Source: Sphyrna mokarran
Lineage: Eukaryota
Direction of reading: 5' to 3'
Length of the DNA stretch: 64,000 nt
NCBI GenBank assembly: GCA_024679065.1
Contig: JAGIQG010000004.1
Coordinates: forward strand, 54,994,001-55,058,000
This document shows, in pieces, positions 13,512 to 43,030 of the stretch. The notes below the pieces were generated by a model. The model was not told the DNA's origin. It saw only the letters and a list, made by a program, of their open reading frames with translations, and did no database searches. The number at the start of each line of letters is the position of its first letter. Position 1 is the first letter of the stretch. Position numbers and translations under genes: made by a program.

Positions 13512-13566
13512 ATGTCGCTGAGACCTGCAGTTCAGAGTATGGTTCTTCTGTGGATGGTCTGGACAG
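13512..13566 (+). CDS. Gene 1 exon 1, signal peptide (MSLRPAVQSMVLLWMVWT-G)
   Basis: ATG at 13512, hydrophobic 18 codons, donor G|GTAC in phase 1. Same length (55 nt) and donor as the paralog exon 36031-36085. Confidence 0.85.
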
Positions 13567-16500
13567 GTACTGTTGCTTGTTATATGTTGCCTTTCAGAAT
13601 ACCTTAATTTCTATTTTAGAATATTCGCAAAGTTTCGCCGTGACAAATTAGATGCGTTACAGCTCCAATTCGATCGTTGGTGCTTCTTAACTGTTCTTGT
13701 ATTTTACTTACTTTTTGTTTTCTTTGACGCATGTAGCTTATCGCCGTTCTTTTTTATAGGTGCGAAAATAACATGGAGCAAAGTAGATCAATTCCCTAAA
13801 TATTTGACGGTTGCCAGGGGTGAAAATGTTTCCATGTTCTGCACATTTCCCATGCTTGAGAGCGATCCTGAAGTTTCTTGGTGGAAACGGGGCGAGGAAT
13901 CTATTCTGGAATCAGACAACAGAAAGAAAATTTATCTAAAGAAAGGCAGTAGTTCATTTCAAGTTCTGAATGCGAGTGTTGCAGACTCCGGAATGTATCA
14001 CTGTTCAGTAAAACATCAACATAACAAGATTGGGGATGGAAGTGGTTCCCAGCTCACTGTGTATGGTAAGTATCATTGTACCGGAGAAAGGTCGCTTTTC
14101 AGCTGTATGCGTGATTTATGTAAGTTGAACTTCTATCATTGGATGAAAATCTGGATTCGTTTTTCGTTGCTGGAATCTTTTTTCTATTGACCTCCAGGTT
14201 CGATTGCCTGTCTCCTGATTCGCACCACTGTCCAAGATAAATTTCACCTACTCCCTGACTATCCTCGTGACATTCCAAAGTGTTTTTCATCCAATCAGTT
14301 CTGTTGGTTCACTTGTAATTGTTACTGTCGTGGTTCCCCAGGACGACAATATACTTTTAGCTTATTAAATGAGAGTCTGAGTCTTGGTTTTCCAGGTAGT
14401 AAGACTTTATTCTCCAGCACACAAGAACAAAGCCGGGATGTCCGGAACACTCCAGTGAAATGCTCACTTACAGCTTGTCTTATACAATTTGCAGATACAT
14501 GCCTTGAGATTCTTATCTCATTCTCAAAGTTAGCTTATCTTTAACCCCCATTAGTGCTGGTTCTGCTAATAATTTATCTTGTCGTGGATTGGTCACTAAT
14601 CGATGCATTTACGACTCTGTAAAACCAGTTTGTTTATACAAGAGTTCTGACCGTTGCCCTCACCCCATTAATGTTGTTTATACACAATGGTGGCTTAGCT
14701 AGACTTTAAACTAAGTGACAAAGAGAATATATGTACCCCATCCCTGTTTTCTAGGCCACAGTGTGACCATTGTTTCTCAAGGTTTAACTGCCTACAGCTG
14801 CTTACACTCAATGTTTAATAAATGCTTACCATCCTGATTCTATCACACTAGCCACCATACATTCAATTACATTAAATAACATACTGGGCTCATTATATTT
14901 CAACATCTTGCCCATCGCATGTTGGTGAGACTATATTTCGCATTCTACTGCTACTACTACAAATATTCTCTTACATTCATGATACTGTTGCTACTACAAA
15001 TATTCTCTTACATTACTGAAAATGATACTGAAATAAAAAGATCGCATCAACTCTGAGATTGAGATTAATCAATTCGATGAGTTGTTCGATTTTCTTGTCC
15101 GAAATATTAGTACCTAAGTGAAAAAATGGAACAATTTTAACACGGCCCATGTCAAATCTTTTGTAAACTATTAATTCATGTCATAGGTCCCACAATTTAC
15201 CTCTGTTAAAAGCTCAACAATTTTAATACCTTCTCATTGCTTTCAAGATTTCATGCACCAGCTAACTTCTGAACTCACTGCTTTATATTGCTTTATAATT
15301 TATTATTTCTAAAATGAATACAAACGCGATGTTTAAGAAATCACAGAGCGAATAATTATTTCCACTGTAAGAATGTAACATAATTGATGCGGCATACAAA
15401 TGCCAATGTGTTCCTTTACATTAAAAATTACCTTTTATTTCCTTGTTAAAGTTCCCCCAACCCCCTTGAAGCTCTTTCAGGTTGAACGGATTTCAGCGAC
15501 CTCTCTGAGGTTCGAGTGTAAAACGGCTGCCTTTTACCCAGAGGATTTAAAAATCTCCTGGCGCAGAGATGGTGTGGAAATTCTCGCCGGAATAGAAACT
15601 GTGAGAAACAAGACAGTGGATGGTCTTTTTGAGGTCACCAGTTCTTTGGAAGAAGCACAACCTGTCCCGAGCCGAATAGTTTATACATGTCTGGCATCTC
15701 ATATCTCCCTTAAGGTGCCCGCCAGTGTCAACTATATCGCCATTCAAGGTAAGATTGGGCACTTGCAGCAGCGAGCGAGGCTTCCGAACTATAGTCATTT
15801 ATTAAACATTTAGCAGGGCAGCTGTTCAAACACAAAGTTTCAGAGTGAGTGTGGACATTCTTTAACCTCAATGCCACATCATTGGAAATGAATTAAAATA
15901 TCTAAGGTGGTTTGTAACTGCAGGAGAGGGAATATTTCCCTGAAAACATCTGAAACGGGAGGGCGATATGCGAACTGCTCAAAACTGAATGCTCTTTTGT
16001 TATCAAATTCTTGCCAAATGAAATGAACCTACACATGAAATGATCAGTTTTAGCAGTATTACTTTAACTGGACATTTCCTGTGTGGAACTTTAGCCAACG
16101 ATATCGTTCAAGGATATTCCCTCCATTACCCAGAAGCTCTTGATCATTATAAAAGTATTTCTCCTTGATCCAAACACTAAACTTCGCCAGGTGGGGGGGG
16201 GGAGGGGGTGTTCCGCCTTGATTTACATCATACATTGAATTCCTCTTTTCCTTATTTTTTCTCTCAAAATGCGAAGGCATAAAAAATGCTTCCAAAACTC
16301 CTCTGGTTGCAACTTCCCTTTACTCCAATAAACAATACTCTATGACAGTTATTAGCACTGTGGGTGTAAACTGTAAAAATGAGGAAACTACAATGCACCT
16401 ACAGAGCGTTTGGCGCTTGATCCGTGTTCTGGTGAGAGTGCATCTGCCATGAGGGAAACGAGCCGAGCTACCAAACTGAATATCAGAATCCGAAAGCATA

Positions 16501-17157
16501 ACTTGCGTCCTGGTGAAGTTAGCCGTGCGGGAAGATCATAACCTGATATTCAGCGAGTTAAATTTTGATCGCTGAGGGCGGTGTTGTGTGAGTGAGTTGT
16601 ATTGTCCCACGTTATTAGTATAGGGTCCAGAGGAACATTTCTGTTTTTTCCTACAGAGCCAAAAATATTTTTAAGCCTTTTGATTGGGATTTCTTTACTT
16701 GCTTTGTCGATACATCTAGTAGAAAGAACAAGCACACATATTATATCCTAAAATGGACATCAGTGTCCTATTTGAAAAGATGCCAATTGCCGGCAAAATG
16801 GCGCCGGCATCAAGCAACAGGCTGTCTTGGAAGATGGAGTGCATTATGTTAAAATGTTCACGTGGCGTTCAATATGCGGAGCGTCTTTTGAGGGTATTTT
16901 CTGTTCGGTTGACTTTGGAAATTTAATATCGGTCACAAAGTTTAGAGTAGCAATTGTATGGATCTCTTTCATGTCTAGAAGCCAGTACTATTTGGTTTCA
17001 TTCAATAATTCATATGTACGGAAAATTTATGTGTATATTTTAATCCTGCACTGTAGATAGTTTCTGGAACGTGATGATTTCACGGCTTGTTCTGAGTTTT
17101 TTGATAATTCTTGGATTGCTCGGTATAATTGTGGACCATGGGGCATATTTCAATTGA
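13512..17157 (+). CDS. Receptor gene 1: non-rearranging VJ-C1-TM immunoglobulin superfamily receptor, 252 aa; join(13512..13566,13760..14065,15452..15748,17057..17157)
   Basis: Four exons with GT/AG boundaries and all phase-1 junctions splice to an uninterrupted 759-nt ORF (leader, V, C1, TM). Every boundary is mirrored in the paralog at 36031-41203. Confidence 0.9.
13760..14065 (+). CDS. Gene 1 exon 2, Ig V-type domain with germline-joined J-like segment
   Basis: Acceptor TTTTTATAG|, donor G|GTAAGT. Protein KVDQFP...MFCTFP...VSWWKR...ADSGMYHC...GSGSQLTVY has the B-strand Cys, C-strand Trp, DxGxYxC and a GxG G-strand. Confidence 0.93.
15452..15748 (+). CDS. Gene 1 exon 3, Ig C1-set domain
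   Basis: Acceptor TTGTTAAAG|, donor G|GTAAGA. Motifs FECKTAAFYPEDLKISW, DGLFEVTSSL and YTCLASHISL are C1-set signatures (C-x4-FYP-x5-W, YxCxxxHxSL). Confidence 0.93.
17057..17157 (+). CDS. Gene 1 exon 4, transmembrane segment and short tail (DSFWNVMISRLVLSFLIILGLLGIIVDHGAYFN*)
   Basis: Acceptor CACTGTAG|, in frame with C1, hydrophobic stretch preceded by Arg, TGA at 17155-17157 followed by AG|GTAAG. Same arrangement in the paralog. Confidence 0.88.
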
Positions 17158-18273
17158 AGGTAAGGGGACACCGTTTTAATTCAGCAAACTACGTTCAAGG
17201 TGTATATACATAGTTAACACTGGTGGGCTGGAAATGAGAGATGTTCTTTTGCTCATCGTTTCTCCGGTAATTTAAGACTCACGGGCAGTGATATTAAATT
17301 CTCCTATTAAGTAACTCATAAGATAGAAGGCCATCACTTTTACCATGACAATGCTCATATTTAGTGCTATTAAAAAGTCAGAGATGAAATGTTAAATCAG
17401 TTTCCCTTCCAAGCCGAGCTGCCTGATCTGCCGAGTTTTTGCCACGTTTTCTGCTTTTATTTAATGTTATATTAGTTTTCCCATTAAATTCAGTTTCGCG
17501 CATGATATGCCAAGTGATAAACACTGAACATCAGTTTTGAGCGTTAGTTTAGTTTTTTCTCCTTTCGTGAAAAAAATTTTGATTTCAACTTCTCACTTGG
17601 GATACTTGAACACAAACATCCAGCTAGCATTGCAGCGCAGGACTGCTGGAGGTTTGGTCTTTTTTCAACGTCTAAAAACGAGCCCGTCTGCTCTTTATTG
17701 TGACCGTAAAAGCCTAATTGGTCATTTCGTAACTGAGCACCGTGGAGTTCGCTTGTGATCTGATCAGAAATTCGTTTTCAATCTACTTCGCTAAAATCGA
17801 TTCATTTTTCATTTATTTCAAAAATCTATGTGATTAAAAACGTCCCTTGTTTTTTTAAGTGCACGTTGCATATCTCGCTGCTGTGAAAGACTGCATATCA
17901 ATATTGATCCGTTCTTCTGTTTTGCAAGATTTTTATGTATGTTTAGAAAAATCATCATGCAAACGACACTTTCTAGGCACTGTTTCCCATTTTGCGTTAA
18001 ACTCTGCTAGAATTATGAGGTTAGGAATCTGGCAGAAGTACTCAATTTCGGAAATATGCTTCTCATGATGAAATTTTCAATACGTTTACATGTATCCTTT
18101 TATCTATTTTGCTTCCCTTCTCAAGGCGCTATGTCTAGTTGCCATGCCCACAATCTTCTCCCGCCACCAGTTCGTTTGGTATTACTGTTAAGGCGTGAGC
18201 ATCACGTTGTTGAACTCAGAGTCGTCATTTTTAGATTAGCAGTTTAAATCGTGGCCCTGGGATAAGTATCTGG

Positions 18274-18515
18274 TAAGAAGTCTCACAACACCAAGCTAAA
18301 GAACAATGGGTTTATTTGGTAGAAAACGCCACTAGCTTTTGGGGTGCTGCTCCGTCGTCAGGTGACTCACCTACTCACTCATCCACTCACCTGAGAAAGG
18401 CGCAGGGCTCCAAAAGCTAGTGGCGTTTCCTACCAAATAAATCTTAGGATTTTAACCTGGTGTTGTGAGACTTCTTACTATGTTTACCCGACCCCAAATC
18501 CGGCATCTCCACATC
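18274..18515. mobile_element. Penelope-derived inverted-repeat element with 12-bp target-site duplication
   Basis: Arms about 18274-18365 and 18385-18478 are reverse complements; ATAAGTATCTGG at 18262-18273 and 18516-18527; decayed CTGANGA...GAAA hammerhead cores in both arms. Confidence 0.75.
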
Positions 18516-18974
18516 ATAAGTATCTGGAGCAGAGTGTAATGCTAATTTTCCCTAGCTATCCCTGAATACACAAACAGCTTCATCTTTTCAACTGTTGCAG
18601 AACTGTGCATATTGTACACGACATAGGGGAAATCTAACCTACCATCTTCTGATGAGTATGTTTGGCTGCGTATTCATTCAGTGCTAAATGGAATTTTTTT
18701 TAACATGTGCAAGAAATCACGGGATACCAAGAGACTGCTTGAAATTTTCGATCCAAATATGTAACAAGAGCTTTTTGTTTTCAATTTGAATGTCGTTCTA
18801 AATTGAATGAGTGGAAATCCGTCAATTCCGGATAGATAATGATGAGTTAACGTTTGCCTTTTATATAAAAAGAATGTAATATATGATTACTCACACGTAC
18901 AATAATCAAAGTTTTTACCAAATGAAACTGAAAACGTGAATAAAACTTTAGCAAGCTGATATTTTGTAATCCCA

Positions 18975-20570
18975 TTTTTCAGCTTTTAGTCCATAGATAT
19001 GTATGTTGTAGCATTTCAAATGATTGTCTAAATGATGTTTAAATGTCGTTCAGACAGTGAATTCCAGATGCCCATTATCCTCTGGGTGAAATTACTTCCT
19101 CTCACATCTCCTGTAAACCTCCCTCCTACCTCTTAACTTCAGTCTGTGTCCTCTCATTATTGACCCCACTCCTAAGAAGAAATGTTCCTTCCGAGCCACC
19201 ATACTTAAGCCCCTCATAATTTAATTCATCTCAATCAGGTCCCCCACCCCCATCGTCTTCGGTGATCCACGGAAACCAAACCCAGCCTATTCAGTTTCTC
19301 TTGTTAGCTGAAATGCACCAGCCCCAGCTGAATCTTATCTGCACTTTCATGATTGCAAGCAATTCTTCTCGATCGTGTAGCGACCAAAATTGCATACACT
19401 ATTCCAGCTCTTGCCTAACTAGCGTTCATACAGCTCCATCATAAATAGCCTGCTCTAATATTAAATGCCTCAGCTGATAAAGACAAATATCCCATATGTT
19501 TTCTTAAGGCTTATCTACCTCTCCTGCTGTTATCAGAGATCTATGAAGCTGTGCACCTGATCAATGGTTGTAAATTCCTTTGCATTTTAGTATTTCAAGA
19601 CATATTACCTCACACTTTTTGAGGTTGAATTTCATTTGCCACTGTTCCGCCCATCGAACCAAACCAATATCGTCCTGTTCTGAGGATTTGCTTCTCACAG
19701 TTTACCACACCACCAATTTTTGTGTCCTCTGTGAACCTACTTATCATACCACCTATATCCACGTCCAGAATATTATTGTATACTACGAACAAAAAAAAAG
19801 GCCCAGTATCAATCCTGTGGAAGGCGACTAGACATCCGCTTCCTGTCGCAAAAACAATGTAGGAACATCATGCTCTTCCTTCTGACGTTAAACCAATTTA
19901 GCATCCAGTTAAATTGTCCTGGATCCCATGGCAATCCCATCTTTATCGGCGTCCCATATGGGACCTTGTCAAAAGCTTTATTGACGTCTATGTAGAATAC
20001 ATCAACTGCACTCCCCTCACCGACACACTGAATCACCTCTTCGAAGAAGTCGGTAACATTTGTAAGGAATGATTTCTCTTTGACAACAATGTGCTGATTA
20101 TCCTTGATTAATTCTTGTGTCCCCAAGTGCAGATTAATTACGTCCAACAGAACGTTTTCCGATTATTTCCTATCACAAATGTTACTCTCATTGCCTTGTA
20201 ATTTCCTGTTTTTTCCCTACTTTCCTTTTTGAATAACGGTATCACATCAGCTATCATCCAATCCTCAGCTATTGGACTTTAACCTGGTGTTGTGAGATTT
20301 CTTAGCGTGCTTACGCCAGTCCAACGCCGTCATCTCCATATCATGGCTCTGCTATGGCCGGAGAAGATTTGAAAATTATCGTCAGAACTGCTGCAATCTA
20401 TCCCCTTTCCTACCACAGCAGCGCATCTCATCTGGGCCTTGTCATTTATCAACGTAAGGCCCGTTGAAACGTCCTCTTTTTTAATGTTTGTCAACATAAG
20501 GCCCCTTAAAACCTTCTGGCTCTTAACGTTTATTAACGTAAGGCCCGTTAAAAGCTCTTCTCTCTTAATG
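18975..20570 (-). mobile_element. Degraded CR1 LINE in the last intron of gene 1
   Basis: ORFs 19610..19792 and 19809..20147 (AVDVFYIDVNKAFDKVP); absent at the paralogous site at about 42245. Confidence 0.8.
20445..20570. repeat. 3 x 42-bp tandem repeat
   Basis: Units TTT(A/G)T(C/T)AAC(G/A)TAAGGCCC..TT.AAA...TTAA(T/C)G at 20445, 20487 and 20529. Confidence 0.8.
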
Positions 20571-20903
20571 CTATGTTCTAACATTGAAAATGGTGGCATA
20601 TTTATTTAAATTAAATTTGCCTAAGTCTCGGTCGTGTTTATTGTAAGGATATTTTAATAATTACAGCCGAATAGCATTGAAGGGATGTAATTGGAGACAG
20701 TTTCACTAAGTTAGTAATAGTTTGATGTGATACAGATGAGCGTGCTTCAATGAGTCTAGAAATATAGATGCAGTGCTGAATTTACTTGCGGATTTGGAAA
20801 ATCAATGCAATTAAGTGGGAACTGTTTGTGAATATAAAATTGAAACTATAATTAAAAGACAGTGCATCGTTTAGAAAACAAATTTCAATTTCCTTTTTGA
20901 TAG

Positions 20904-21300
20904 GTTAAGATGGATTGACAATCTCCGCCTCTGTTTATATCTGCACCTTAGACATTGTTAAAGAACAGATAAAGGCGGAAGAAGAAACACTCGAAGCAAG
21001 GAATAAGGCAAAGAAGCCACAATCGAGACGGACCAGCGACACATCCAGCATTCGCTCACAGCCATTTTCAGTTGTATTTAGATACATTTTTTTCCTATAG
21101 CATTAGAATATAAAAATATAGTTGTTAGTTGACGCCCGTGCATAAAATGAGTTGCTGCATTCCTTGTAAGCGCAGTAACATAAATGGACAGTTGGCCGTG
21201 GGATTAATCCTCATGTTGAAATTTTAGGAGAGCTGGCACGTATCTTGATGTATGAGTCTCGTCAATTGAAAGTATTTTAAAATTAAATATAACTCTTGAT
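20904..21300 (+). other. Gene 1 probable untranslated terminal (3' UTR) exon
   Basis: Pyrimidine tract TTTCCTTTTTGATAG| at 20903, homology to 42572-43030, ATTAAA at 21282-21287 aligned with AATAAA in the paralog. An unused donor follows the stop codon. Confidence 0.6.
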
Positions 21301-21319
21301 TTTATAAGTATCTGGTCAG

Positions 21320-22980: not shown

Positions 22981-22999
22981 AGTAAGTTCTCAAAACATG

Positions 23000-24457: not shown

Positions 24458-25912
24458 ATAGAACATAGAACAATACAGCACAGAACAGGCCCTTCGGCCT
24501 TCGATGTTGTGCCGACCAAAATAAAAAGCAATGCCCCTCCTAACTAAACCATTCCCTTCTCATCCATATACTTATCAACTAACCTCTTAAACGCCACCAA
24601 ACTTGGCGCATCTACAACAGCTGCCGGCAGGGCATTCCACTCCCTAATCACTCTTTGAGTAAAGAACCTACCTCTGATATCCGTCCTATAACTCATACCC
24701 CGTAATTTAAAGCTGTGTCCCCTCGTGCTAGCTTTCTCCATCCTAGGAAAAAGGCTATCACTGTCCACGCTATCTAAACCTCTAATCATCTTATATGTTT
24801 CGATTAGGTCCCCTCTTAGCCGCCTCCTTTCTAACTAAAACAACCTCAAATCCCTCAGCCTCTCTTCATAAGACCTACCCTCCATACCAGGCAACATCCT
24901 GGTAAACTTCCTCTGTACCCTCTCCAATGCCTCCACATCTTTCTTATAATGTGGGGACCAGAACTGCACACAATACTCCAAGTGCGGCCGCACTAGAGTT
25001 TTGTACAGTTGCAACATGATGCGGCGGCTCCTAAATTCAATCCCCCTACCAATAAAAGCTAAGACTCCATAAGCCTTCTTAACAACTTTATCCACTTGAC
25101 TGCCTACTTTCAGGGATCTATTGACACATACACCAAGATCCTTCTGTTCCTCAACACTATTAAGAGCCCTACCATTAGCCCTATACTCTACACATTTATT
25201 GTTCCTGCCAAAGTGCATTACCTCACACTTTTCCACATTAAACTCCATTTGCCACCTCTCGTCCCAGCTCTGCAACTTGTCCAAGTCACTCTGTAAACTA
25301 AAACACCCCTCTTCACTATCTACCACACCACCAACTTTAGTATCATCTGCAAATTTACTGATCCATCCCTCAATACCCTCATCCAGATCATTTATAAAAA
25401 TTACAAACAGCAGGGGCCCCAAAACAGACCCATGAGGCACACCACTCGTCACCGAACTCCACGATGAATATCTCCCATCAACCACCACCCTCTGTCTTCT
25501 ATCTGCCAGCCAATTTCTAATCCAATTAGCTAAATCACCCTCTATTCCACACATCTGCATTTTCTGTAGAAGTCTTCCATGGGCCACCTGATCAAAAGCC
25601 TTACTAAAGTCCATATATACTACATCAACCGCCTTACCCCCATCCACCTCTCTGGTCACTTTCTCAAAAAACTCACTGAGGTTAGTAAGGCATGACCTAC
25701 CCTTCACGAAACCATGCTGACTATCCCCAATCAATTCATTTCTCTCTAAATAACTATAAATCCTATCCCTGATAATTCTCTCCAATACCTTGCCCACCAC
25801 AGAAGTAAGACTCACTGGCCTATAATTCCCAGGAAGGTCTCTCTTCCCCTTCTTAAACAATGGGACCACATTCGCCATCCTCCAGTCCTCCGGAACCACA
25901 CCCGTAACCAAC
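24458..25912 (-). mobile_element. Young 5'-truncated CR1 LINE, RT domain almost intact
   Basis: 358-aa ORF with NYRPVSLTS, QHGF, DFSKAFD, GSVLGP and FADD; a single TAG at 24835-24837, after which the frame continues to 24544; (ATAGAAC)n tail. Confidence 0.95.
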
Positions 25913-33612: not shown

Positions 33613-34123
33613 TTGTATCACTTGCTTTGTGGCACCTCGATATCGGACCTTCATTCAGGTGCCTCAAACTATTTCATATCAAATTTGTGCAATCTTAAAA
33701 GGGAATAACTGTTGAAAAATGAAGGAAGAATTTTAATATTTAGCTCAACTTGTGGAAAACTGTACAAATTCTGACACAATCAACTAATTAAAATGCCATA
33801 TGCCACTTACATATTGAACTGGATTCAATGATGAGAAATATATCAGATCTTCACTGTATCTTTGGTGCAAGGGATGAATTCTAAATGGCTTTACAATTTG
33901 CAAGTACATCTGCAAAGTGAACAAAAACAACTGGACATTAGAAAATAAGCTCTTGGTAAAATTGCAAATTACAACGAAATGTTTCAACAATGCAACATTA
34001 TAGGCAATATGCGGGCTAGAAATTCATTACTGAAAACCAAATAACATAATATTTGACTGCTTTTGTTAGGGGGGGATTTCTGTTACTTTGATTTGAATGT
34101 AGCAATATCAGGAAGAGAACTTG

Positions 34124-34810: not shown

Positions 34811-35902
34811 TACAATAAACCGTTACATTCATCTCATTGAGCTTGTTTCATTGATAGTGTAATGTTTTCCAGTGTGATTAATATGAATGCGCTGGGGAAA
34901 TTAAATATTAAATCATGTTTACGGTCCTTTCTGCTTAACTCTTGTCAGGAAGATTCGGCTGCTTTAAAACAAGTGTTAATATTAAGTAATTTGGTAACAT
35001 TCACTACCAAAATATGCCATGTACCATAAACCATGGCCTAGCCATGGATAAATGTGCCGAAAGTCAAGTGATACTAGTCACAAAAATAGTGACACCCTAC
35101 TTTGGTACGAGTTGGAAGCATTTTCGTAAGAGAAAACGTACTTATGGTCTCGCCTCTCCGATTGTGCAATAGATAAGGCGCAAACCTACTGTCTTCTGAA
35201 CAAAGAATAGCTCTAAATGTAGGTGGCTATCGTTTTTTACCGCCAGACTCACAGTAATTTCATTGCATTGTTAATATAAGCCCAGTTGTGAAGCAAATAA
35301 ATATTTTTAAAAACTCCATCCAACGTATGCTACACGGCATCGCAGGAGGTAAATCTAATAAACTGAAATCAATTTAAAACTTAAAACACCATTATCAAGA
35401 AACACCATTTACTAACAAATTATTTTGTGGATGTGATAAATGTGAAAACTGGTGTAAACCCATCTATAAAGCTTTGGCTTGCAGTAAAAATTCACTATTA
35501 TTGTCTTCGACGCACTGGAATGAGGAATGAGGAGATGATCAGGATTATTAATCAGAATAGTTATTCCAGCGATGTCTCAACACGTTGTTTGAAGTCTCGA
35601 TCATACCCGACCCTAAGTACTCAGGACTAAAAGTTTGCACATTTTGTGTTCCGGCAGAAAGTAGAATGTCTTTGATGAAGTGCTGCAGGACCGCTTGCGG
35701 CCTGCATCGTTATTTTCAGGATTGAATGAAGCGTCGATATACTTGACGATATACTTGATAATGAAAATTATTGTAACGAAGTTTCCAGAAAGTGGCTGAA
35801 AGACATTACTCCTCAAGACACATCTTTTCAGCTGGTATCAAGGTCAGCTTCTACTTCGCAGACAGACGCAGAGAAATGTAAACGCACCCGATACGCTGTT
35901 TT

Positions 35903-35936
35903 AGTCATGTGATCGCTCATGTCGTGGTCACGTGTT
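35903..35936 (+). promoter_or_regulatory. Candidate proximal promoter E-box module, gene 2
   Basis: GTCATGTGAT (M-box-like) 125 nt before the ATG, plus GGTCACGTG (E-box). Confidence 0.45.
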
Positions 35937-36030
35937 TCATATATTTAACCATAAAATCTATTTGTTACGCAAGCTAATGTGGCTATCTTTCTCATTGGCG
36001 CAAATAGACAAGTAACGAATTATTTGCAAC

Positions 36031-36085
36031 ATGTCGATACAAGTTACAGTTCACTACATGGCTCTTCTGGGCGTGTTTTGGCCAG
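36031..36085 (+). CDS. Gene 2 exon 1, signal peptide (MSIQVTVHYMALLGVFWP-A)
   Basis: ATG at 36031, donor G|GTAC, paralogous to 13512-13566. Confidence 0.85.
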
Positions 36086-39000
36086 GTACATTTAGTTATC
36101 AGATGTTGCCGGTTTCACAATAGCAAATCCTAATTTAAAAGATTCTAAATCTGTTACCCACTGTAAAGCTGGATACTGTGCTTCTCTAATTCGATTCCTT
36201 GTTTTCATAATTTACTTCTCTCGGTTATTTTTCTTTATCTGTTACATCACCGCCTTTGTTTCTTTCCCGACAGCCGCCGAAGTAACTTGGGCCAAAGTGG
36301 TTCAGATCCCCAAATACTTCAACGTGAGCAGAGGCGCGAACGCTTCCATACTCTGCACATTTCCCTTATTTCCAGATATGCCCGATGTTCGTTGGTGGAG
36401 ACGTGGAGAGCAATCCTTTCTCGAACCAGACAGCAGAAAGCGATTTGATGCGGACAAGGGAAGTAGTTCGCTTGAATTCCTGAATGTGACTTTTGCAGAT
36501 TCCGGAATTTATTATTGTAAAGTGGAGTATCTAGAAAAAGTTAATGAAACTGGAACTGGCACCCAGCTTACTGTATACGGTAGGTCTGATTGTCTCAGCG
36601 CCATATGTGCGATTTGATTCTTTTTATCACTAGAGGAAAAAGCGATTGCGAATTTCTTTTACAGAACACTGGATTGTTCTCCATTGACCTCGATGCACAG
36701 TGGATATATTAGTTCAAATAAAAGCAAATGATTGCGCAATCTGGAATCTGAAGCAAAAACAGAAAATGCTGGAGAATCTCAGCAGGTCTGTGTAGAGAAC
36801 AGAACTCAAGTTTTAAATCTGGATTTAAGTCATCAAGTCTGGAAACGTTAGCTCTGTTCTCTCTCTCCACAGATAAAGACAGAGCTGTTGAGATTTTCCA
36901 ATAACTTCTGTTTTCGTTATTGTAAATTCGAAAGTATGCAATGGAAAAATGCGAAATAAAAAGACACGTTTTGGAAAAGGTCAGCATGCCAAGGAGCCTA
37001 TGTGGGAAGTTAAAAACGCTTTCATTGTCGATTATGAAAATCGATCTGAAACGTTAACTCGGTTTCTCTACACGGATGTTCCCTCACCTGCAGAACATTC
37101 TCCTTATTTTCAATTTGTATTTGAGATTTCATGCCTGTGCTGTATTTTGTGTTGATAGTTGAATGGGATTTCAGTTTCCTTCATGTCACAGGGACATGGC
37201 CACAATTCAATAATTGAATCAACTTTAACACCTCACAGGTCAAACCTTTTTCAAATTTTGATTATCAGTTTATTAATCTGAACAAGGGAGGAATGTTCGC
37301 TGCGTGCTTAGTGACACCCACAATTGGAACTGCGAGGAGCAACAAATCAAAACGAACCCAAAATGGAAGTGATTGCAAAGAGAAAGAAGTTTTCGGTGAA
37401 AGTTAGTCCATTCAAGTACTCGTTCATTTTGTTGTAGATTGCCGTTTCCAAATCGTCTCTGTGCCGAGTTCGTTGAGCTAAATCAGGAGGCGAAAATCAA
37501 TTGGGATTCTTATTCCTCACTCCTCCCGCTTTAATTTGAACAATTTGGTAATATTTACAAGGGACTAGACTGTAGCTAAATTCACCCAAAGGTTAGAAGT
37601 GTTGTGTTATTTTGCCAGTCACCTTAAATCGGTCTTCTGGTTATCGACTCTTGTGTCACTGAGAACACTTTCACCTTATTGACTTTATGAAAACTGATCA
37701 GAACTTTCAAAGTTGCTATCCAGCCTCCTTTAAACATTATCACGTTTAAATAGAACAACCGTAACTTATTCAGTCTCTGCATATAATCCAAGTTCTTTCA
37801 CCCTGGTAAAGATCCAACATTCTCAGTGCCTTCATAATAAACTCGGGTGAAAACTCCCCAAACACAGCGACGAATTTTCCTCAAACCACACCTTTTTTTC
37901 TGCTAATTGCTCGAAATTGCCGATGTTACACTTTCCATGTGCCCGAAATTTGTGACGGATAGGGTTTTTGCTATGTTTCAGTGTCAACCGTATGTCCGCA
38001 GTTTATATTTGGTACATGGATCCATTTATATGTTTCACATTCCAAAGTTTTCAAAAACCAGATTCTACAACCCAGTAAAAGGAAGGATTTTGCCTTCAAT
38101 GCTGGATTCCACTCTGGATTCTAGACTGTGCAGGACAGTAAAGGTGCCCGGTGCTTTTGTTTGAACCTCTTGGGTACGCCACCTGAATTTCCGATGATAT
38201 TGCCATAACAGATAAAGCGGAGGCTGGGTATCACCGAACATTCATAAAACACCTGGCATCCTTTTCGCAATTCATGATTCCCATGTACACATCCCATGCC
38301 TAGACGAAAGTTGAGTAGGAGATCGAGAGAACACTGGCTTCTTTCTCCCAAGCAGGTTAAAACAAGGTCATGTGAAAAGAACTGAGGAATTATGAGTCTT
38401 TGTTGGAATAACAGCCAATGTAATATTTAATATGGCTGTAAATTATTAATTTTCTACTACTACAATGTCGCAAAAGTAGACTCATGAGTAAAATATATAA
38501 AATAGATTGATTATAATAAATAAATCTATGTAAACCTAACAAAAAACTTTACAAGGTGATTGTGGATAGAGTGGGCAGACTGATAGAGGGTTTCGCACCA
38601 GAAAATGATAAATTTGGACTGCTCGAAGGAAAATCTTCTCCAGACAAAATGCGTTCAGCTGGTCGAATGACACTACCATAAACGCCTGGAATTAACGGTT
38701 CAAAAAGCAAAATACTGCGGTTGCTGGAAATCTGAAATGAAAACTTAGTGTTTACTCAGCATTTTTTGTTTTCATCCCTGGAATTAACCCTTAGGTTATT
38801 TTCCCTATTAAGTTTCAGTCATCCGTATGGGTATGATGATCTGTATAGATATATATAAAATTCTCAAAATTACATCTTTCCTGTTTTACAAAATACTCTA
38901 ACCTTCATTCCTGCCTTGAGAATTATCCTTTACTGAATAATGCAAGATTTGAAACTTGCAGCATAGATAATGAAATGTTATATAATCAACAGTACCTTGT

Positions 39001-41203
39001 TTAGATATCGGAGATATTTTGATTTCACACATATTTTGAATTGACGCATTTACTGAAAAATCAAACTAACTAAATAGTCGAAGCGGGCCGTTTTTCAAAT
39101 CATCACACTTTATTACGGCAATGATTCCTGAAGGGGAAAAAAAAACGTTAGTAGAATCCAATGTTCGTGCAGACTGGTGCTCCCTTTCTGATATATTCAG
39201 GCCGAAATCTCACGCGAGGTCACTGCTGCCACACATAATTCCGCGCCAGCATCTGCTGCTTTATTTCCGAGCTGTGACACTTTCTTCGCCGTTGTTATTA
39301 ATTCTGGGAAATTGATCATCTTTTTGTATCGCTTGCTAAACATCCGGCATTTTTGCAGAGCATCAGATAACATTCTCCCCAATAAATACAAGTCACAAGT
39401 TTCAAAAGTACGATAACTATTATCACAGTGGGAGTGTAAGAGCGTATGGAGGTTAAGCCACCGAGAATATTCTCCTTTTAATTCAGTTCTTTTTCACCCT
39501 GTTAAAAGTTCCTCCAACACCACTGAAAATCGTTCCGATTGAAGATAATTCAGCGACTTCTCTAAGATTTGAGTGCAAAACGGTTGCATTTTACCCGGAG
39601 GATTTAAAAATATCCTGGCGCAGAGATGGCGTGGAAATTCTGGCCGGAATTGAAACTGTGAGAAAGGAAACGGTGGATGGTCTTTTTGAGGTCTCCAGTT
39701 CTTTGGTAGAAGCACAGCTTCCCCAGAACGGAGTCGTTTATACATGTCTGGCATCTCACATCTCCCTTAAGGTGCCCGCCAGCGTCAGCTACACCGTCAT
39801 GCAAGGTAAGGTTGGAAACATTTACTGCAGCAATTGGGGGGAAATGCTCCAAACTGTATCTATTTATTAGATATGAAGGGACAATTATTTAAACTTAAAT
39901 ACACGAGGTGAATGAGAACTTAATCGCGATGTCACATCAATGAAAATGAGTTAAAATAATCACGATGGTCGTTGAAGAAGGGAGAATATATTCCTGAAAA
40001 GATGTGAAACGGGAAGTTGATGTGCGAAGTGTTCGAAAGTGAAAGCTTATTTCTCACTAAATTCTTGCCAAATGAACTGAACTTACAAATGAAATGGATC
40101 GGATTTAGTATAGTCATTTTTAATTGGAACATTTCCTGTGTGGAACTTTAGCCAACATCGTTTGAGGACATTTCCTCCACCATCCAGATACTTTTTCCAT
40201 TACTAACCTAGTTCTCTTTTATCCAAACATTAAACTTCGGAAACACCTTCTTTCACCTGGTTTTACTTCATTCACTGAATTCCCTCGTTCTTTAAATTTT
40301 TGGAAATACTGAAGCACGAAGAATTGTTTCTAATGCTCCACTAGTGGCAATTTCAGTTTTGGACCCTTTATTCCAATAAACAATTGTTCATTACACTATG
40401 GGTGAAAACTTTGTAAATTAGAGCATAAAAATGCAAGTATAGAGCATTTGGTATAAGATGCCTGTACTGGTGACAGCGTGTGTGCCATGCCAGAAGCCGA
40501 CCCAACCTACCAAGGCGAATATCAGAAAACCTAAACTATGTGTCGTCCTAATTAAGTTAGCCGATCACAGACTGATCACCAGCGAGCGACATTTTCATCG
40601 CTGAGGATGGTGTTGGGTGCTCAACTTGTAGTGTTATTATTATTAGTATTATTATTACAGAGGTTATTATTACAGAGGTGCATTTCTGTGATTTTTCTAT
40701 CGAGCCAAATATATGTTGGACTTTGTTTTTGCATTGTTTATTGGCATTGCTCATAAACTACCAGAGAGAACAGAGTAAACACATTCTGACTGAAAATGGA
40801 CATCACTGTTCTATGAGATTTGAAGAAAAACCAAAAGCCAAAAGAATGGCGCTGCGACCGAGCAACAGGCTCTCTCGCAAGGTGGAATGTACTATGTTCA
40901 CACGTTGACTTGGTTTTCAGTTTGGGAATTGTAATTTGAGGTTATTATCGTACGTTATTTCACGCTGGAATTTAATATTCCAAGTTCAGAATAGCAATTT
41001 TATGGATCCCTTTCATTTATAGAAGCCAGTGTTATTTGCTTCCATTCGGCAATGCTGATATAAACAAGTATATGTATATATTTTAATATTACATTGCAGA
41101 TTACAGTGTCCACAATGTGATGATTTCACGGCATGTTCTCGGTTTTTTGACAATTCTTGGACTGCTGGGCGTAATTGTGAACCATGTAACATGTTTCAGT
41201 TGA
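36031..41203 (+). CDS. Receptor gene 2: non-rearranging VJ-C1-TM immunoglobulin superfamily receptor, 253 aa; join(36031..36085,36274..36579,39509..39805,41100..41203)
   Basis: Four phase-1 GT/AG exons splice to an uninterrupted 762-nt ORF. Exon lengths 55/306/297 are identical to gene 1. Confidence 0.9.
36274..36579 (+). CDS. Gene 2 exon 2, Ig V-type domain with germline-joined J-like segment
   Basis: Acceptor TTTCCCGACAG|, donor G|GTAGGT. Protein KVVQIP...ILCTFP...VRWWRR...ADSGIYYC...GTGTQLTVY. Confidence 0.93.
36715..37155. mobile_element. Two adjacent Penelope-derived palindromic elements in gene 2 intron 2
   Basis: AAACAGAAAATGCTGGAGAATCTCAGCAG ... CTGTTGAGATTTTCCAATAACTTCTGTTT inverted arms; GAAACGTTA cores at about 36842 and 37048. 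Confidence 0.6.
38697..38776. mobile_element. Short Penelope-derived insertion with 12-bp TSD
   Basis: CCTGGAATTAAC at 38685-38696 and 38777-38788; body AAAGCAAAATACTGCGG..GCTGGAAATCTGAAAT related to 7280 and 36720. Confidence 0.65.
39509..39805 (+). CDS. Gene 2 exon 3, Ig C1-set domain
   Basis: Acceptor CTGTTAAAAG|, donor G|GTAAGG. Protein VPPTPLKIVPIEDNSATSLRFECKTVAFYPEDLKISW...YTCLASHISLKVP. Confidence 0.93.
41100..41203 (+). CDS. Gene 2 exon 4, transmembrane segment and short tail (DYSVHNVMISRHVLGFLTILGLLGVIVNHVTCFS*)
   Basis: Acceptor CATTGCAG|, in frame, conserved NVMISR..L.FL.ILGLLG.IV, TGA at 41201-41203 followed by AG|GTAAG. Confidence 0.88.
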
Positions 41204-42153
41204 AGGTAAGAGAACGTCAACTTAATTCCGTAAAACACTCTGGAAGTATATACAGAGATAACATTGGTGGGTTGGAAATGGGCAAGTCAAGTAATAAATT
41301 CCGAACGTCAATGTTGAGTTTTGGCTTAGTTTTAGCTGCTTTTATTTAAAATGGGTTTGATTTCAACCTCTCACGTGAGAAAAATGAGCACAAAATATTT
41401 CAGAGCAACATTTCTGGAATTTTGGTCTCCTTTCAATCGTTTAAATAGCGCACCCTCTGCTCTATCGGGTTGCCGCAATGACTTCATGAGACATTTTCCT
41501 AACTGGGTAGCGTAGTGCTCGCTGATCTCTTGATCAGTATTTAGTGTTTATATTGGCCTAAGTAACAATTTGGAGAAGAATGTAATGTTGGTTTCCATCC
41601 AGCTCTCTCTGAAAACACAGGCAGGGTCATCTTTTCCAGAGGACATCCAAATAAACATCTTCTGATGTGTTTGTCTCCATACTATGCCTAAGCTTTGCAT
41701 ACGTCTTTATTAAGCATCAAAGGATAATTATTTACGTATGCAAGTTATGGCTGGAAACCAAACTCTTTTGGCTAACATTAAGGCGTCGCATCAAGCCCAT
41801 GATTGGGTGCAATGTCTTATCTTGTCAGTTTGGACTTTCGTTGTTTCTCTTATGGGAACAATGAATTGGAAACAATTGAAATTTGAATTTAGTTTTTGGA
41901 GCAAGAAAAGAAAGAATTCTGGTTTTCGGGGTCCATTCTGCGCATTGGATTTCTAACTTTATGTAGTAAACAATTAAAAAGTAACTCGCTGCATACCAAG
42001 TGAGTGCGGGCAGTTTGAATATGTCATTTCAGATATGTAACCGAGAGCTGTATTTGTGTTTAAATGTTATTCTATATCCAGTGAGTGAAAATCTGTCTTG
42101 GGTAATGAGGAGTTCACATTTATCTTTTATATAAAAGAGATGTAACATATAAT

Positions 42154-42174
42154 CACACACACACACACACACAC
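42154..42174. repeat. (CA)n microsatellite
   Basis: About 10 CA units; the paralog at about 18890 has only CTCACACGTACA. Confidence 0.9.
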
Positions 42175-42571
42175 AAGAATCAAACAGTATCGCCAAATGA
42201 AATTGAAAGCATAAACGCAAGTTGGGGAAGCTGATGGTTTTCTAATATTGGAAATAGTGACTTTTTTCTGAATTTAGCTTGCCTAGGTTCTGATTGTATT
42301 TATGGTATAGATATTTTAGTAATTATCATCGAATTACAATGAAAGGATATCTTTGGAGGCAGTTCCTTTAAGTTTGATATTGCTCCAGTTGAATGCGCAT
42401 CTGTGAGTCTAAAAATATAAATGTCGTACTGAATATACTCGCGGATCTTTGATTGCTGAGGCTGACAGGATTAAATGGGAACTGTGTGTCGATATAAAAT
42501 TGAAAAGAGTAACTAAAATAAAGTGCATTGTTTCGAAAACACTTTTCAATTATGTTTTTAATAATAATCAG

Positions 42572-43030
42572 GTAAAGAGCGGCTGATAATTTCCGCCTCT
42601 GTTCATAATTGCACAAGAGCAGTATCTTGTCCTTTGGGCATGAACAACACGTTTTCACATACAAGTAGGAGAAGAAATACTCCAGAAAAGAAACGATGAA
42701 GAAGCCACAATCAAGACGGATGAACGGTGAGTGCAGCGTTCGCTTACTGTCATTTTAACCTGCATTTCGCTGCACTACCTTTCTGTAAGACTAGAATATG
42801 AAAATACAATTGTAATTGGCCCTGTGCATAGAATCAGTTTAGTGCACTCCATTAATGCGGCAATAGCGATGGCCTTGTTTGAAGGTTCATGTTGTATTTT
42901 TCGGTTGGATTGGAGGTGGGGGATGGCGGGGTGGTGGGGAGTGAGGGGAAGGGTGGCGCTGGCACATTTCTTGATGTATGGATCTTGTTAATGGAAATTA
43001 TTGTTTTTAATAAATTTAATTAATACAAAT
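42572..43030 (+). other. Gene 2 probable untranslated terminal (3' UTR) exon
   Basis: AG at 42570-42571 aligned with the gene 1 acceptor (weaker pyrimidine tract here), homology to 20904-21300, AATAAA at 43009-43014. Confidence 0.55.

What the first reader, a model, noticed from the sequence alone, without database searches (positions are those of the whole stretch)
13512..43030. Tandem pair of intact, non-rearranging antigen-receptor-like genes (leader-VJ-C1-TM with Arg)
Seen: two complete spliced ORFs of 252 and 253 aa with identical exon lengths (55/306/297 nt) and all phase-1 junctions. The J-like G strand (GSGSQLTV, GTGTQLTV) is encoded contiguously in the V exon, with no intron or RSS, and is followed by one C1 domain and a TM with a minimal tail. 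Established: C1-set domains are restricted to jawed-vertebrate immune families (Ig, TCR, MHC, beta2m, tapasin, SIRP, B7-H6), and VJ-C1-TM-short tail is the layout of a TCR chain and of the hypothesised pre-RAG receptor. Inference: this is a shark multigene family of germline-encoded activating receptors that automated annotation would probably label 'SIRP-like'. It may be uncharacterised or may correspond to PRARP-type or NKp30-related non-rearranging VJ genes; I cannot tell which from the sequence alone.
Basis: partly seen in the sequence, partly recalled or inferred. Interest (0 to 1): 0.9.

Follow-up and report, generated by a model that had tools for sequence, protein, structure and literature searches.

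The report
Two shark activating V-C1 receptor genes
Two neighbouring, intact shark genes encode small surface receptors built like a single T-cell-receptor chain but fixed in the germline; they belong to a large cartilaginous-fish receptor family that databases name inconsistently and that I could not find described in print.

Summary
Two tandem four-exon genes have coding exons of 55/306/297/101 nt and 55/306/297/104 nt, 6 of 6 introns GT-AG, all phase 1, giving 252 and 253 codons.

Exon 2 is a compact V/I-type Ig domain whose J-like G strand lies inside the exon. No RSS-like motif occurs in the 64 kb. Exon 3 is a C1-set domain. Exon 4 is a transmembrane helix with an Arg near its outer end and a 7-8 residue tail.

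The genes belong to a family found in 15 shark, ray and chimaera species. NCBI calls its members SIRP-alpha-like, B7H6-like, tapasin-related-like or Ig-lambda-like. Some members have the Arg helix and a short tail; others have an uncharged helix and ITIM/ITSM tails. That is a paired activating/inhibitory receptor family, and the window holds two activating members.

The two V exons are old lineages shared with Scyliorhinus canicula. The C1-TM module looks younger or homogenised within the species.

Untested: expression, because no RNA run was listed. Relation to PRARP was not testable. SIRP, NKp30, UrIg and rearranging-receptor membership each fail at least one defining feature.

First-stage notes, unchecked, list similar genes elsewhere in this genome.

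Verdict: real, intact genes; a new member of a known kind.

The parts
13512..13566 (+). Gene 1, exon 1: start codon and split leader (55 nt, ends in phase 1)
   Evidence: Sequence read. Donor GTACTG. Hydrophobic leader peptide.
13760..14065 (+). Gene 1, exon 2: compact V/I-type Ig domain with the J-like G strand (GSGSQLTV) in the same exon
   Evidence: Pfam ig 43.7, I-set 42.5 and V-set 41.9 bits, all above cut-off. Family V HMM 130 bits. Boundaries.
15452..15748 (+). Gene 1, exon 3: C1-set Ig domain (FYPEDLKISW and YTCLASH motifs)
   Evidence: Pfam C1-set 30.6 bits against cut-off 21. PDB matches are UrIg2, an Ig C domain, HLA-DO beta and B7H6. Family C HMM 132.8 bits.
17057..17157 (+). Gene 1, exon 4: short stalk, TM helix with Arg near the outer end (ISRLVLSFLIILGLLGIIVDH), 7-residue tail. 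Stop TGA at 17155-17157, followed by AG and a GT donor.
   Evidence: Phase-1 acceptor scan. Alignment with gene 2. tblastn of family tails.
36031..36085 (+). Gene 2, exon 1: start codon and split leader (55 nt)
36274..36579 (+). Gene 2, exon 2: compact V/I-type domain with J-like strand GTGTQLTV. 73% identical to the V domain of S. canicula XP_038662025 (P0014).
   Evidence: Pfam V-set 48.4 bits. BLASTP 74/101 identical. V tree 100/99 with P0014.
39509..39805 (+). Gene 2, exon 3: C1-set domain, 79% identical to that of gene 1
   Evidence: Pfam C1-set 31.7 bits. Alignment. 75/98 identical to P0014.
41100..41203 (+). Gene 2, exon 4: stalk, TM helix with Arg (ISRHVLGFLTILGLLGVIVNH), 8-residue tail, stop TGA, then AG and a GT donor
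42568..42624 (+). Gene 2: homologue of the last coding exon of orthologous gene models in other sharks. Here it lies downstream of the stop, so it is presumably an untranslated last exon. The matching stretch of gene 1 (about 20.9 kb) carries a stop in that frame.
   Evidence: tblastn of the tails of P0164, P0161 and P0166 (E 0.001 to 0.06). Alignment A4. Splicing not verified.
15441..17236 (+). Gene 1 3' module (C1 exon, intron 3, TM exon) that aligns with gene 2 at 39497-41280. Similarity begins 11 nt before the C1 exon.
   Evidence: blastn blocks 15441-16186 / 39497-40239 (77.6%) and 16628-17236 / 40673-41280 (72.5%). Intron 3 identity 314/423, against about 50-59% for intron 1, intron 2 and the 5' flank.

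Best explanation
The window holds two intact, tandem genes for activating members of a paired (activating/inhibitory) receptor family of cartilaginous fish.

Each protein is a type I membrane protein. It has a split leader, then a compact V/I-type Ig domain whose G strand keeps the Gly-x-Gly J-like bulge and is encoded in the germline without rearrangement. One C1-set Ig domain follows, then a stalk of about 9 residues without cysteine, a transmembrane helix with an Arg in its outer third, and a tail of 7-8 residues with no signalling motif.

Inferred mechanism. The V-type domain binds a still unknown ligand through its BC and FG loops. The Arg recruits a dimeric ITAM adaptor of the zeta/FcR-gamma type through the Arg-Asp-Asp contact used by TCR-alpha/delta, CD89, NKp30 and NKp46. 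Ligand binding then activates the cell. Family members with nearly the same ectodomain but an uncharged helix and ITIM/ITSM tails give the opposing inhibitory signal.

Shown: gene structure, domain types, family membership, the two tail types, purifying selection, and the older age of the V exons. Inferred: expression, adaptor pairing, ligand-binding loops, and function.
For: Gene structure: 6 of 6 introns GT-AG, phase 1, with identical exon lengths in both copies.

Domains: V-set/I-set/ig and C1-set all above Pfam cut-offs. The C1 exon matches UrIg2, an Ig C domain, MHC II beta and B7H6 C domains in the PDB.

Germline-joined: 0 RSS-like motifs in 64 kb, against 0.82 in shuffles.

Family:
- 28 of 28 hits of P0014 are chondrichthyan, as are 31 of 33 hits of the family profile.
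- RefSeq models in other species place the V|C1 and C1|TM junctions at the same residues.
- Of 39 family proteins, 8 have the Arg...[DE][HY] helix with short tails, 12 have an uncharged helix with ITIM/ITSM tails, 11 have a helix but no motif, and 8 have no helix in the model.
- P0161 (Arg helix) and P0163 (uncharged helix) of S. canicula have almost the same V domain.

Selection: dN/dS is 0.36 for V and 0.26 for C1. pN is about equal to pS only in the BC loop (0.44 against 0.47) and the FG loop (0.55 against 0.53; 1 of 11 residues identical).

Adaptor rule: an Arg in the top half of the helix goes with zeta-zeta or FcR-gamma (passages of PMC13107469).
Against: - No transcript evidence. No RNA run was listed, so read laying could not be used.
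- No adaptor was identified in this genome.
- Gene 2 has Asn where gene 1 and 8 relatives have Asp/Glu at the inner end of the helix.
- Both window genes stop inside the TM exon, whereas orthologous models in S. canicula, Heterodontus and Heptranchias read on into a further coding exon. This could be an early step of decay.
- The N-terminal domain matches I-set domains of DCC, NCAM2 and titin better (56 to 74 bits) than Ig/TCR V domains (24-26 bits) in the PDB. 'VJ' is therefore a loose label.
Confidence: 0.7

Rival explanations
1. The family is the cartilaginous-fish branch of PRARP, the non-rearranging V-C1-TM-ITIM genes described in chicken and other bony vertebrates. The window genes are then its activating variants. 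This would make them known in kind and in name.
For: The architecture recalled from the abstract of Fu et al. 2019 (not held) is a J-containing V domain, C1, TM and an ITIM tail. That matches the inhibitory members seen here. PMC10751288 (passage) lists PRARP with NKp30 among the VJ genes.
Against: - No PRARP sequence could be obtained, so nothing was compared.
- The word-limited profile search found no bony-vertebrate V-C1 protein above 80 bits; the best was a Bos mutus SIRP-beta-1-like model.
- From my recollection of that abstract, PRARP was reported in bony vertebrates only.
Confidence: 0.25
2. They are true SIRP orthologues (SIRP-beta-like), as several RefSeq names imply.
For: - RefSeq names 'tyrosine-protein phosphatase non-receptor type substrate 1-like' and 'signal-regulatory protein beta-1-like'.
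- The family profile matches SIRP-alpha 2wng_A at 102 bits over V+C1, and SIRP-gamma at 90 bits.
- The paired activating/inhibitory logic is the same.
- ITIM tails of the LTYAAL type resemble SIRP-alpha tails; the SIRP side of this comparison is recalled.
Against: - There is one C1 exon, not two.
- The helix has an Arg near its top, not the mid-helix Lys that goes with DAP12 (abstract listing of PMC12975943).
- V identity to a Bos SIRP-beta-1-like V is 28% with 19% gaps.
- A lambda-containing chain (135 bits) and UrIg2 (122 bits) score higher than SIRP-alpha.
- PMC13262535 (passage) dates the SIRP family to Tetrapoda.
Confidence: 0.1
3. They are members of the shark NCR3 (NKp30) family.
For: - A non-rearranging J-containing V/I-type domain plus a TM Arg, as in NKp30 (for the Arg and the zeta/gamma pairing).
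- Sharks have several divergent NCR3 family genes (title and citation of Kinlein et al. 2021 seen; the paper is not held).
Against: - NKp30 has no C domain (recalled). PMC12227049 section 7 calls NCR3 a 'VJ domain gene' and contrasts it with the VJ-C1 genes.
- No NKp30 chain is among the best 60 PDB matches of the V exon or of the family profile.
- A first-stage note places an NKp30-like gene next to AIF1 on another piece of this genome (unchecked).
Confidence: 0.06
4. The genes are unexpressed or decaying copies (young pseudogenes) of an otherwise functional family.
For: - Both carry a stop inside the TM exon where orthologues read on.
- The downstream exon of gene 1 has a stop in the old frame.
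- No RNA run was listed.
Against: - All four exons are open in both genes and all splice sites are intact.
- dN/dS is 0.26-0.36 since the copies diverged.
- The stop removes only a motif-free tail and lies 2 nt before the last donor, which by the usual 50-55 nt rule (recalled, not tested) would not trigger nonsense-mediated decay.
Confidence: 0.08

Closest known systems
SIRP family (SIRP-alpha/beta/gamma)
   Same: - Germline V domain with a J-like G strand followed by a C1-set domain.
- Paired inhibitory (ITIM) and activating (charged TM, short tail) members.
- The family profile matches SIRP-alpha 2wng_A over V+C1 at 102 bits.
- RefSeq names many family members after it.
   Different: - One C1 domain, not two.
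- A compact V domain lacking about 15-20 residues of the C'-C'' region in the BLASTP alignment.
- Arg at the top of the helix rather than a mid-helix Lys.
- 28% V identity.
- SIRP is dated to tetrapods in PMC13262535.
[quoted passage not shown] 2019, recalled, not held)
   Same: Non-rearranging V with a J-like strand, one C1, TM, and an ITIM tail in the inhibitory members. This is the same layout as the inhibitory members of the shark family.
   Different: - No sequence comparison was possible.
- PRARP was reported in bony vertebrates (recalled).
- The window genes are the activating type, with a TM Arg and no ITIM.
UrIg / UrIg2 of elasmobranchs (PMC12227049; PDB 9dmx)
   Same: - Non-rearranging single-exon VJ domain, split leader and C1-type domains, in sharks.
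- UrIg2 is the best PDB match of the C1 exon (E 7.6e-14 summed over three domains).
- C domains are homogenised within a species, as reported there for UrIg2 C2-C9.
   Different: - UrIg has three C domains and is secreted. UrIg2 has 9-11 C domains and forms disulfide-linked dimers.
- Here there is one C1, no stalk cysteine, a TM Arg, many paralogues, and paired tails.
- The best single-domain score is only 25.8 bits.
NKp30 (NCR3)
   Same: Germline J-containing V/I-type domain, an Arg in the upper part of the helix, a short tail, and signalling through zeta/FcR-gamma.
   Different: NKp30 has no C1 domain (recalled). It is not among the best PDB matches.
TCR chains (alpha/delta especially)
   Same: The order leader, V(J), C1, short connecting piece, TM with a basic residue, minimal tail. 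The Arg in the upper helix is the residue type TCR-alpha uses for zeta-zeta.
   Different: - No V/J split and no RSS.
- No connecting-peptide cysteine and no second basic residue (Lys) in the helix.
- No TCR chain is among the best 60 PDB matches of the family profile.
Teleost NITR and other paired innate IgSF receptor families (recalled)
   Same: Multigene, fast-diversifying, germline V domains with J-like strands, in activating and inhibitory forms.
   Different: The second NITR domain is I/C2-type, not C1-set, and NITRs are known from ray-finned fish only (PMC6795676 passage, notes their absence from coelacanth).

Membership tests
Chondrichthyan V-C1 paired-receptor family (unnamed; RefSeq 'PTPNS1-like', 'NCR3LG1-like', 'tapasin-related-like') | V and C1 domains group with family members from other species | tested here: met
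   Gene 2 V is 73% and C1 77% identical to S. canicula P0014. The V tree gives 100/99 for gene 2 + P0014 and 94/86 for gene 1 + P0161/P0163. In the C1 tree the window pair is sister to the S. canicula trio.
Chondrichthyan V-C1 paired-receptor family (unnamed) | Activating-type TM (Arg, then 15-18 residues, then [DE][HY]) with a short tail | tested here: met
   Gene 1 matches fully. Gene 2 has Arg but Asn-His at the inner end. 8 of 39 relatives carry the motif.
SIRP | Ectodomain of V plus two C1-set domains | tested here: not met
   Exactly one C1 exon per gene. There is no further Ig exon between C1 and TM.
SIRP | Activating members pair with DAP12 through a mid-helix Lys | tested here: not met
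   The helix has an Arg in its outer third and no Lys. The Arg/Lys pairing rule comes from PMC13107469 passages.
SIRP | Sequence groups inside SIRP | tested here: inconclusive
   SIRP-alpha scores 102 bits, below a lambda-containing chain (135) and UrIg2 (122). V identity is 28%. No tree with SIRPs was possible.
NKp30 / NCR3 | Single V/I-type domain without a C domain | tested here: not met
   A C1-set exon is present.
NKp30 / NCR3 | Linkage to the MHC class III region | not testable with these tools
   Only 64 kb are visible, and they hold no other gene. First-stage notes put the MHC genes and an NKp30-like gene on other pieces (unchecked).
PRARP | V with J-like strand, one C1, TM | tested here: met
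   This is an architecture match only.
PRARP | Cytoplasmic ITIM | tested here: not met
   The tails are 7-8 residues without a tyrosine motif. 12 of 39 relatives do have ITIM/ITSM tails.
PRARP | Sequence orthology to chicken, reptile, amphibian or fish PRARP | not testable with these tools
   The Fu et al. 2019 paper is not in the searched library: two searches for PRARP returned only a paper that cites it. I did not look it up by identifier. No protein carrying that name was returned by any search.
UrIg / UrIg2 | VJ followed by three or more C1-type domains; disulfide-linked homodimer | tested here: not met
   One C1 exon and no cysteine in the stalk. UrIg features are from PMC12227049.
Rearranging antigen receptors (Ig/TCR) | Separate V and J segments flanked by RSS | tested here: not met
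   The J-like strand is contiguous in the V exon. There are 0 RSS-like heptamer-spacer-nonamer motifs in 64 kb.
Germline-joined shark Ig light chains | V-J-C without a membrane anchor; V close to IgL V | tested here: not met
   A TM exon is present. The V exon matches antibody/TCR V domains at only 24-26 bits.
C1-set Ig domain (Pfam PF07654) | Score above the gathering cut-off, plus the FYP...W and YxCxxxH motifs | tested here: met
   30.6 and 31.7 bits against a cut-off of 21. C2-set_3 is below its cut-off. The motifs are seen.

The most novel reading that the evidence does not exclude
The family is a surviving non-rearranging sister of the antigen-receptor chain genes. It would be a germline V(J)-C1-TM receptor whose upper-helix Arg already couples to a zeta/FcR-gamma dimer. 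On this reading the TCR-type signalling module, and the paired activating/inhibitory logic, existed before the RAG transposon split a V exon. A multigene family, rather than the single-copy UrIg genes, would then be the pool from which the invaded gene came.
Probability: 0.1. Interest if true: 0.9.

Novelty: new member of a known kind. Interest (0 to 1): 0.55.

Why it matters
Non-rearranging genes with a J-containing V domain and a C1 domain are sought as relics of the receptor that the RAG transposon invaded. The recent literature I could read (PMC12227049, PMC10751288) names UrIg, UrIg2, NKp30 and PRARP, and says the UrIg genes are kept in elasmobranchs alone.

A large family with the minimal V-C1-TM layout is present from chimaeras to sharks and rays. 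It has both Arg-helix and ITIM forms. It is hidden under five or more unrelated automatic names.

The family adds a candidate set for that debate. It also gives cartilaginous fish a paired innate receptor system comparable to SIRP, KIR/LILR or NITR. If it proves to be PRARP or SIRP under another name, the value is a better annotation and an older date for that family.

Tried and rejected

The V-versus-I question rests on sequence only.

ESM Atlas. P0014 gave only generic V+C1 clusters: kappa-like, tapasin-related, SIRBL. The Atlas could not read the window's V exon.

Distant relatives.
- The word-indexed searches reached no bony-vertebrate V-C1 protein. They returned only a Bos mutus SIRP-beta-1-like model with three V domains and a frog VH-like protein.
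- The C1 exon alone found one partial Chiloscyllium model.
- The HMMER representative search lists only its best 150 hits. These are mostly giant multi-Ig proteins, so weaker single-domain relatives were not visible.

TM exon against the PDB: only a chance aquaporin match.

Phylogeny with named comparators (TCR, IgL, NKp30, PRARP, SIRP, tapasin, B7H6) could not be built. No tool returned those sequences as stored proteins, and I did not type any from memory.

Concerted evolution of C1 is only partly supported. The AU test rejects gene 1 C1 with P0161/P0163 (p 0.015) but not gene 2 C1 with P0014 (p 0.175). The groups were named after seeing the tree.

Papers not held: Fu 2019 (PRARP; two searches found only a paper that cites it, and I did not look it up by identifier), Kinlein 2021, Flajnik 2012, Flajnik 2023 UrIg, Ohta 2019. 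Any of them may describe this family. Supplements were not opened, and the supplementary tables of PMC12227049 and PMC10751288 might list such genes.

My statement that the family is not in print rests on nine successful searches.

The joined (spliced) protein of the window genes was never searched, aligned or folded. All searches used single exons or public proteins of other species.

Full report
OBSERVATION. Reading the sequence and tabulating it gives two genes on the + strand.

- Gene 1 exons: 13512-13566, 13760-14065, 15452-15748, 17057-17157.
- Gene 2 exons: 36031-36085, 36274-36579, 39509-39805, 41100-41203.
- Exon lengths are 55/306/297/101 and 55/306/297/104 nt, that is 252 and 253 codons plus a stop.
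- All 6 of 6 coding introns begin GT and end AG, and every junction is phase 1.
- The last coding exons were found by scanning all acceptors in phase 1 for a hydrophobic open frame.
- The window has no N.
- HMMs built from 38 V and 39 C1 domains of relatives find exactly two V and two C1 exons in the six-frame translation of the 64 kb. There are therefore two genes of this kind and no hidden third copy.
- The rest of the window holds reverse-transcriptase fragments of retroelements.

DOMAINS.

- The 306-nt exons score above Pfam's cut-offs for V-set, I-set and ig at similar levels: gene 1 gives 41.9, 42.5 and 43.7 bits, and gene 2 gives V-set 48.4.
- Only 54 residues separate the two cysteines.
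- In BLASTP against a SIRP V domain, about 20 residues of the C'-C'' region are missing.
- In the PDB the exon matches I-set domains of DCC, NCAM2 and titin (56-74 bits) better than antibody, VNAR or TCR V domains (24-26 bits).
- The G strand keeps the Gly-x-Gly bulge of J segments (GSGSQLTV, GTGTQLTV).
- I therefore call it a compact V/I-type domain with a J-like strand. This agrees with a separate first-stage note on the same exon.
- The 297-nt exons pass the C1-set cut-off (30.6 and 31.7 bits against 21), while C2-set_3 stays below its own. They carry the FYP...W and YxCxxxH motifs.
- The best PDB matches of the C1 exon are UrIg2 (E 7.6e-14 summed over three domains; best single domain 25.8 bits), an Ig C domain, HLA-DO beta and the C domain of B7H6.
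- The last exon encodes a stalk of about 9 residues without cysteine, a helix with one Arg in its outer third, and 7-8 further residues.

NOT REARRANGING. The J-like strand is contiguous with the V exon. A scan of both strands of the whole window for a heptamer (at least 6 of 7, CAC fixed), a spacer of 12 or 23 +/-1, and a nonamer (at least 7 of 9) found 0 sites, against a mean of 0.82 in 50 shuffles.

THE FAMILY.

- An HMMER search of 1.84 billion representatives with the two V exons gave 1495 proteins at E up to 0.001. The best 150 are mostly giant multi-Ig proteins, but small single-match proteins stand out among them.
- I fetched 19 of these. All 10 whose clusters I looked up are from cartilaginous fish.
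- Word-indexed searches with P0014 (S. canicula XP_038662025, 259 aa) and with a 24-sequence family profile gave 28 of 28 and 31 of 33 chondrichthyan hits. The other two of the 33 are a Bos mutus SIRP-beta-1-like model (80 bits) and a frog VH-like protein (41 bits).
- Fifteen species are represented: sharks of five orders, rays, and the chimaera Callorhinchus milii.
- The names given by the sources are inconsistent: 'tyrosine-protein phosphatase non-receptor type substrate 1-like', 'signal-regulatory protein beta-1-like', 'natural cytotoxicity triggering receptor 3 ligand 1-like', 'tapasin-related protein-like', 'immunoglobulin lambda-1 light chain-like', 'HLA class II DO beta chain-like', 'M1-specific T cell receptor beta chain-like', and 'uncharacterized'.
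- Gene 2 is 73% (V) and 77% (C1) identical to P0014.
- The public models join V to C1 and C1 to TM at the same residues as my exon boundaries. This is independent, though still predicted, support for the splicing.

PAIRED RECEPTORS AND LIKELY MECHANISM. I classified 39 family proteins.

- 8 have a helix of the form Arg, 15-18 residues, Asp/Glu-His/Tyr, with short tails.
- 12 have an uncharged helix and tails with ITIM and/or ITSM-like motifs (for example LTYAAL, TAYATL).
- 11 have a helix but no motif; several of these are truncated models.
- 8 have no helix in the model.

In S. canicula, P0161 (Arg helix) and P0163 (uncharged helix) have almost the same V domain. This is the pattern of paired activating and inhibitory receptors, and both window genes are of the activating type. 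Gene 1 has the full motif; gene 2 has Arg but Asn-His at the inner end.

A 2026 review (PMC13107469, passages) states the pairing rule. CD89 binds FcR-gamma through an Arg near the top of its helix. NKp30 and NKp46, with an Arg in the top half, are assumed to assemble with zeta-zeta or zeta-gamma as TCR-alpha/delta does. Receptors for DAP12-type adaptors use a central Lys. By that rule I infer pairing with a zeta/FcR-gamma-type adaptor. This was not tested.

EVOLUTION INSIDE THE LOCUS.

- The two V exons are 51% identical in protein with dS 0.92. The two C1 exons are 79% identical with dS 0.44. dN/dS is 0.36 and 0.26, so both are under purifying selection.
- Within V, pN approaches pS only in what I take to be the BC loop (0.44 against 0.47) and the FG loop (0.55 against 0.53; 1 of 11 residues identical). 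The J-like strand is conserved (7 of 9 identical; pN 0.10). Loop labels are by eye.
- DNA similarity between the genes starts 11 nt before the C1 exon and runs through intron 3 (314 of 423 aligned bases identical) and the TM exon. Intron 1, intron 2 and the 5' flank are at 50-59%.
- In trees of 39 V rows and 41 C1 rows, each window V groups with a different S. canicula V (100/99 and 94/86). The two window C1 domains group together (95/93), next to the three S. canicula C1 domains (99/95). P0034 and P0188 were left out of the V tree for lack of a full V.
- AU tests used 17 rows (15 of the 39 family proteins plus the two window genes). They reject a clade of the two window V domains (p 0.004). 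They reject gene 1 C1 with P0161/P0163 (p 0.015). They do not reject gene 2 C1 with P0014 (p 0.175). The groups were chosen after seeing the tree.
- My reading: two old V lineages sit on a C1-TM module that is younger or has been homogenised within the species. PMC12227049 reports the same kind of homogenisation for UrIg2 C domains.

THE TAIL.

- In both genes the stop TGA is followed by AG and a GT donor that is conserved between the copies.
- Models in S. canicula, Heterodontus and Heptranchias read through this point into a further exon.
- A homologue of that exon lies at 42568-42624 in gene 2 (tblastn E 0.001). It is degenerate in gene 1.
- Read by eye from the alignment, the next frame of both window TM exons gives Gln-Leu-Lys up to the donor, as in the S. 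canicula proteins. This suggests a one-base difference that shortened the tail.
- This agrees with another first-stage note. Whether the downstream exon is spliced on as 3' UTR is unverified.

COMPARISON WITH KNOWN FAMILIES. The family profile against the PDB ranks a lambda-containing chain (2rcj_C, 135 bits), UrIg2 (122), two antibody-type chains (CT3 and a light chain, 103 and 102.5) and SIRP-alpha (2wng_A, 102) near the top. SIRP-gamma scores 90. No TCR or NKp30 chain is among the best 60. The domains are thus about equally distant from several V-C1 families.

- SIRP membership fails on the number of C1 domains and on the helix residue.
- NKp30 fails on the presence of C1.
- UrIg fails on the number of C domains and the lack of a stalk cysteine.
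- Rearranging receptors fail on RSS.
- PRARP shares the layout but could not be compared.

LITERATURE.

- PMC12227049: I read the introduction, the UrIg2 results section and the first part of the discussion.
- PMC10751288: passages only.
- These two name UrIg, UrIg2, NKp30 and PRARP as the non-rearranging VJ genes, and do not mention this family.
- PMC13262535 (passages) dates SIRP to tetrapods.
- PMC8455134 (passages) dates C1-set enrichment to the jawed-vertebrate ancestor.
- Nine searches found no description of a chondrichthyan V-C1 paired-receptor family.
- Five key papers were not held, and supplements were closed.

LIMITS.

- No RNA run was listed.
- The joined spliced protein of the window genes was deliberately never searched. 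Exons were searched one by one, and full-length comparisons used public proteins of other species.
- First-stage notes list many other V-C1-TM-ITIM genes on other pieces of this genome, receptor genes 15-17 kb upstream of this window, and MHC genes on other pieces. I could not check these.

VERDICT. The genes are real, intact, germline-joined V(J)-C1-TM genes of the activating type. They belong to a widespread, automatically annotated but apparently undescribed cartilaginous-fish paired-receptor family. In kind they resemble SIRP and PRARP, so I rate them a new member of a known kind, of moderate to good interest.

Noticed in passing
window 15441-17236 versus 39497-41280; also 20576-21276 versus 42240-43002: Similarity between the two genes starts sharply 11 nt before the C1 exon. 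The 3' half is 72-78% identical and C1 dS is 0.44. The 5' half is near random outside the V exon, and V dS is 0.92. This suggests gene conversion or a partial duplication of the C1-TM-3' module.
   Followed up: partly
window 17155-17161 and 41201-41207: In both genes the stop TGA lies 2 nt before a conserved GT donor. Read by eye, the next frame gives Gln-Leu-Lys up to the donor, as in S. canicula proteins that continue into another exon. A one-base difference seems to have shortened the tail in this species.
   Followed up: partly
window 14055-14061: The codons for Leu-Thr-Val of gene 1's J-like strand spell CACTGTG, the complement of the RSS heptamer. There is no nonamer nearby, and gene 2 does not share it. 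It is probably a by-product of the coding sequence.
   Followed up: yes
protein P0010 (Chelonia mydas XP_037733860, 733 aa); also P0043, P0056, P0118 (turtles): Turtle proteins made of six or so tandem V domains, each ending in a J-like GxGT strand. In P0010 a TM helix follows, with an Arg at the top and Ala-Glu at the bottom, resembling the shark activating helix. RefSeq names them NCAM2, pIgR-like, titin-like or FCRL5.
   Followed up: no
protein P0162 (Chiloscyllium plagiosum, 436 aa): This family member has two nearly identical C1 domains in tandem (V-C1-C1) before an ITIM tail. It is either a recent exon duplication or an assembly or model artefact.
   Followed up: no
protein P0172 (Heterodontus francisci): Its V domain sits on a long branch outside the subfamily, but its C1 domain lies inside the Heterodontus C1 cluster. 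This is another sign that C1 exons are exchanged or homogenised within a species.
   Followed up: no
window 24835-25911 (-), 49969-50697 (+), 46703-47420 (+), 50966-51331 (+), 19809-20147 (-): Reverse-transcriptase open frames and fragments of retroelements lie between and after the two genes. Pfam RVT_1 scores 123.9 and 53.9 bits for the two that were tested.
   Followed up: partly
protein P0011 (ENA contig, 135 aa): A predicted protein from an unnamed ENA contig closely resembles gene 1's V exon, by eye. It reads on into the intron as the window's own open frame does. It is therefore probably genomic DNA of a closely related species, not a transcript.
   Followed up: no
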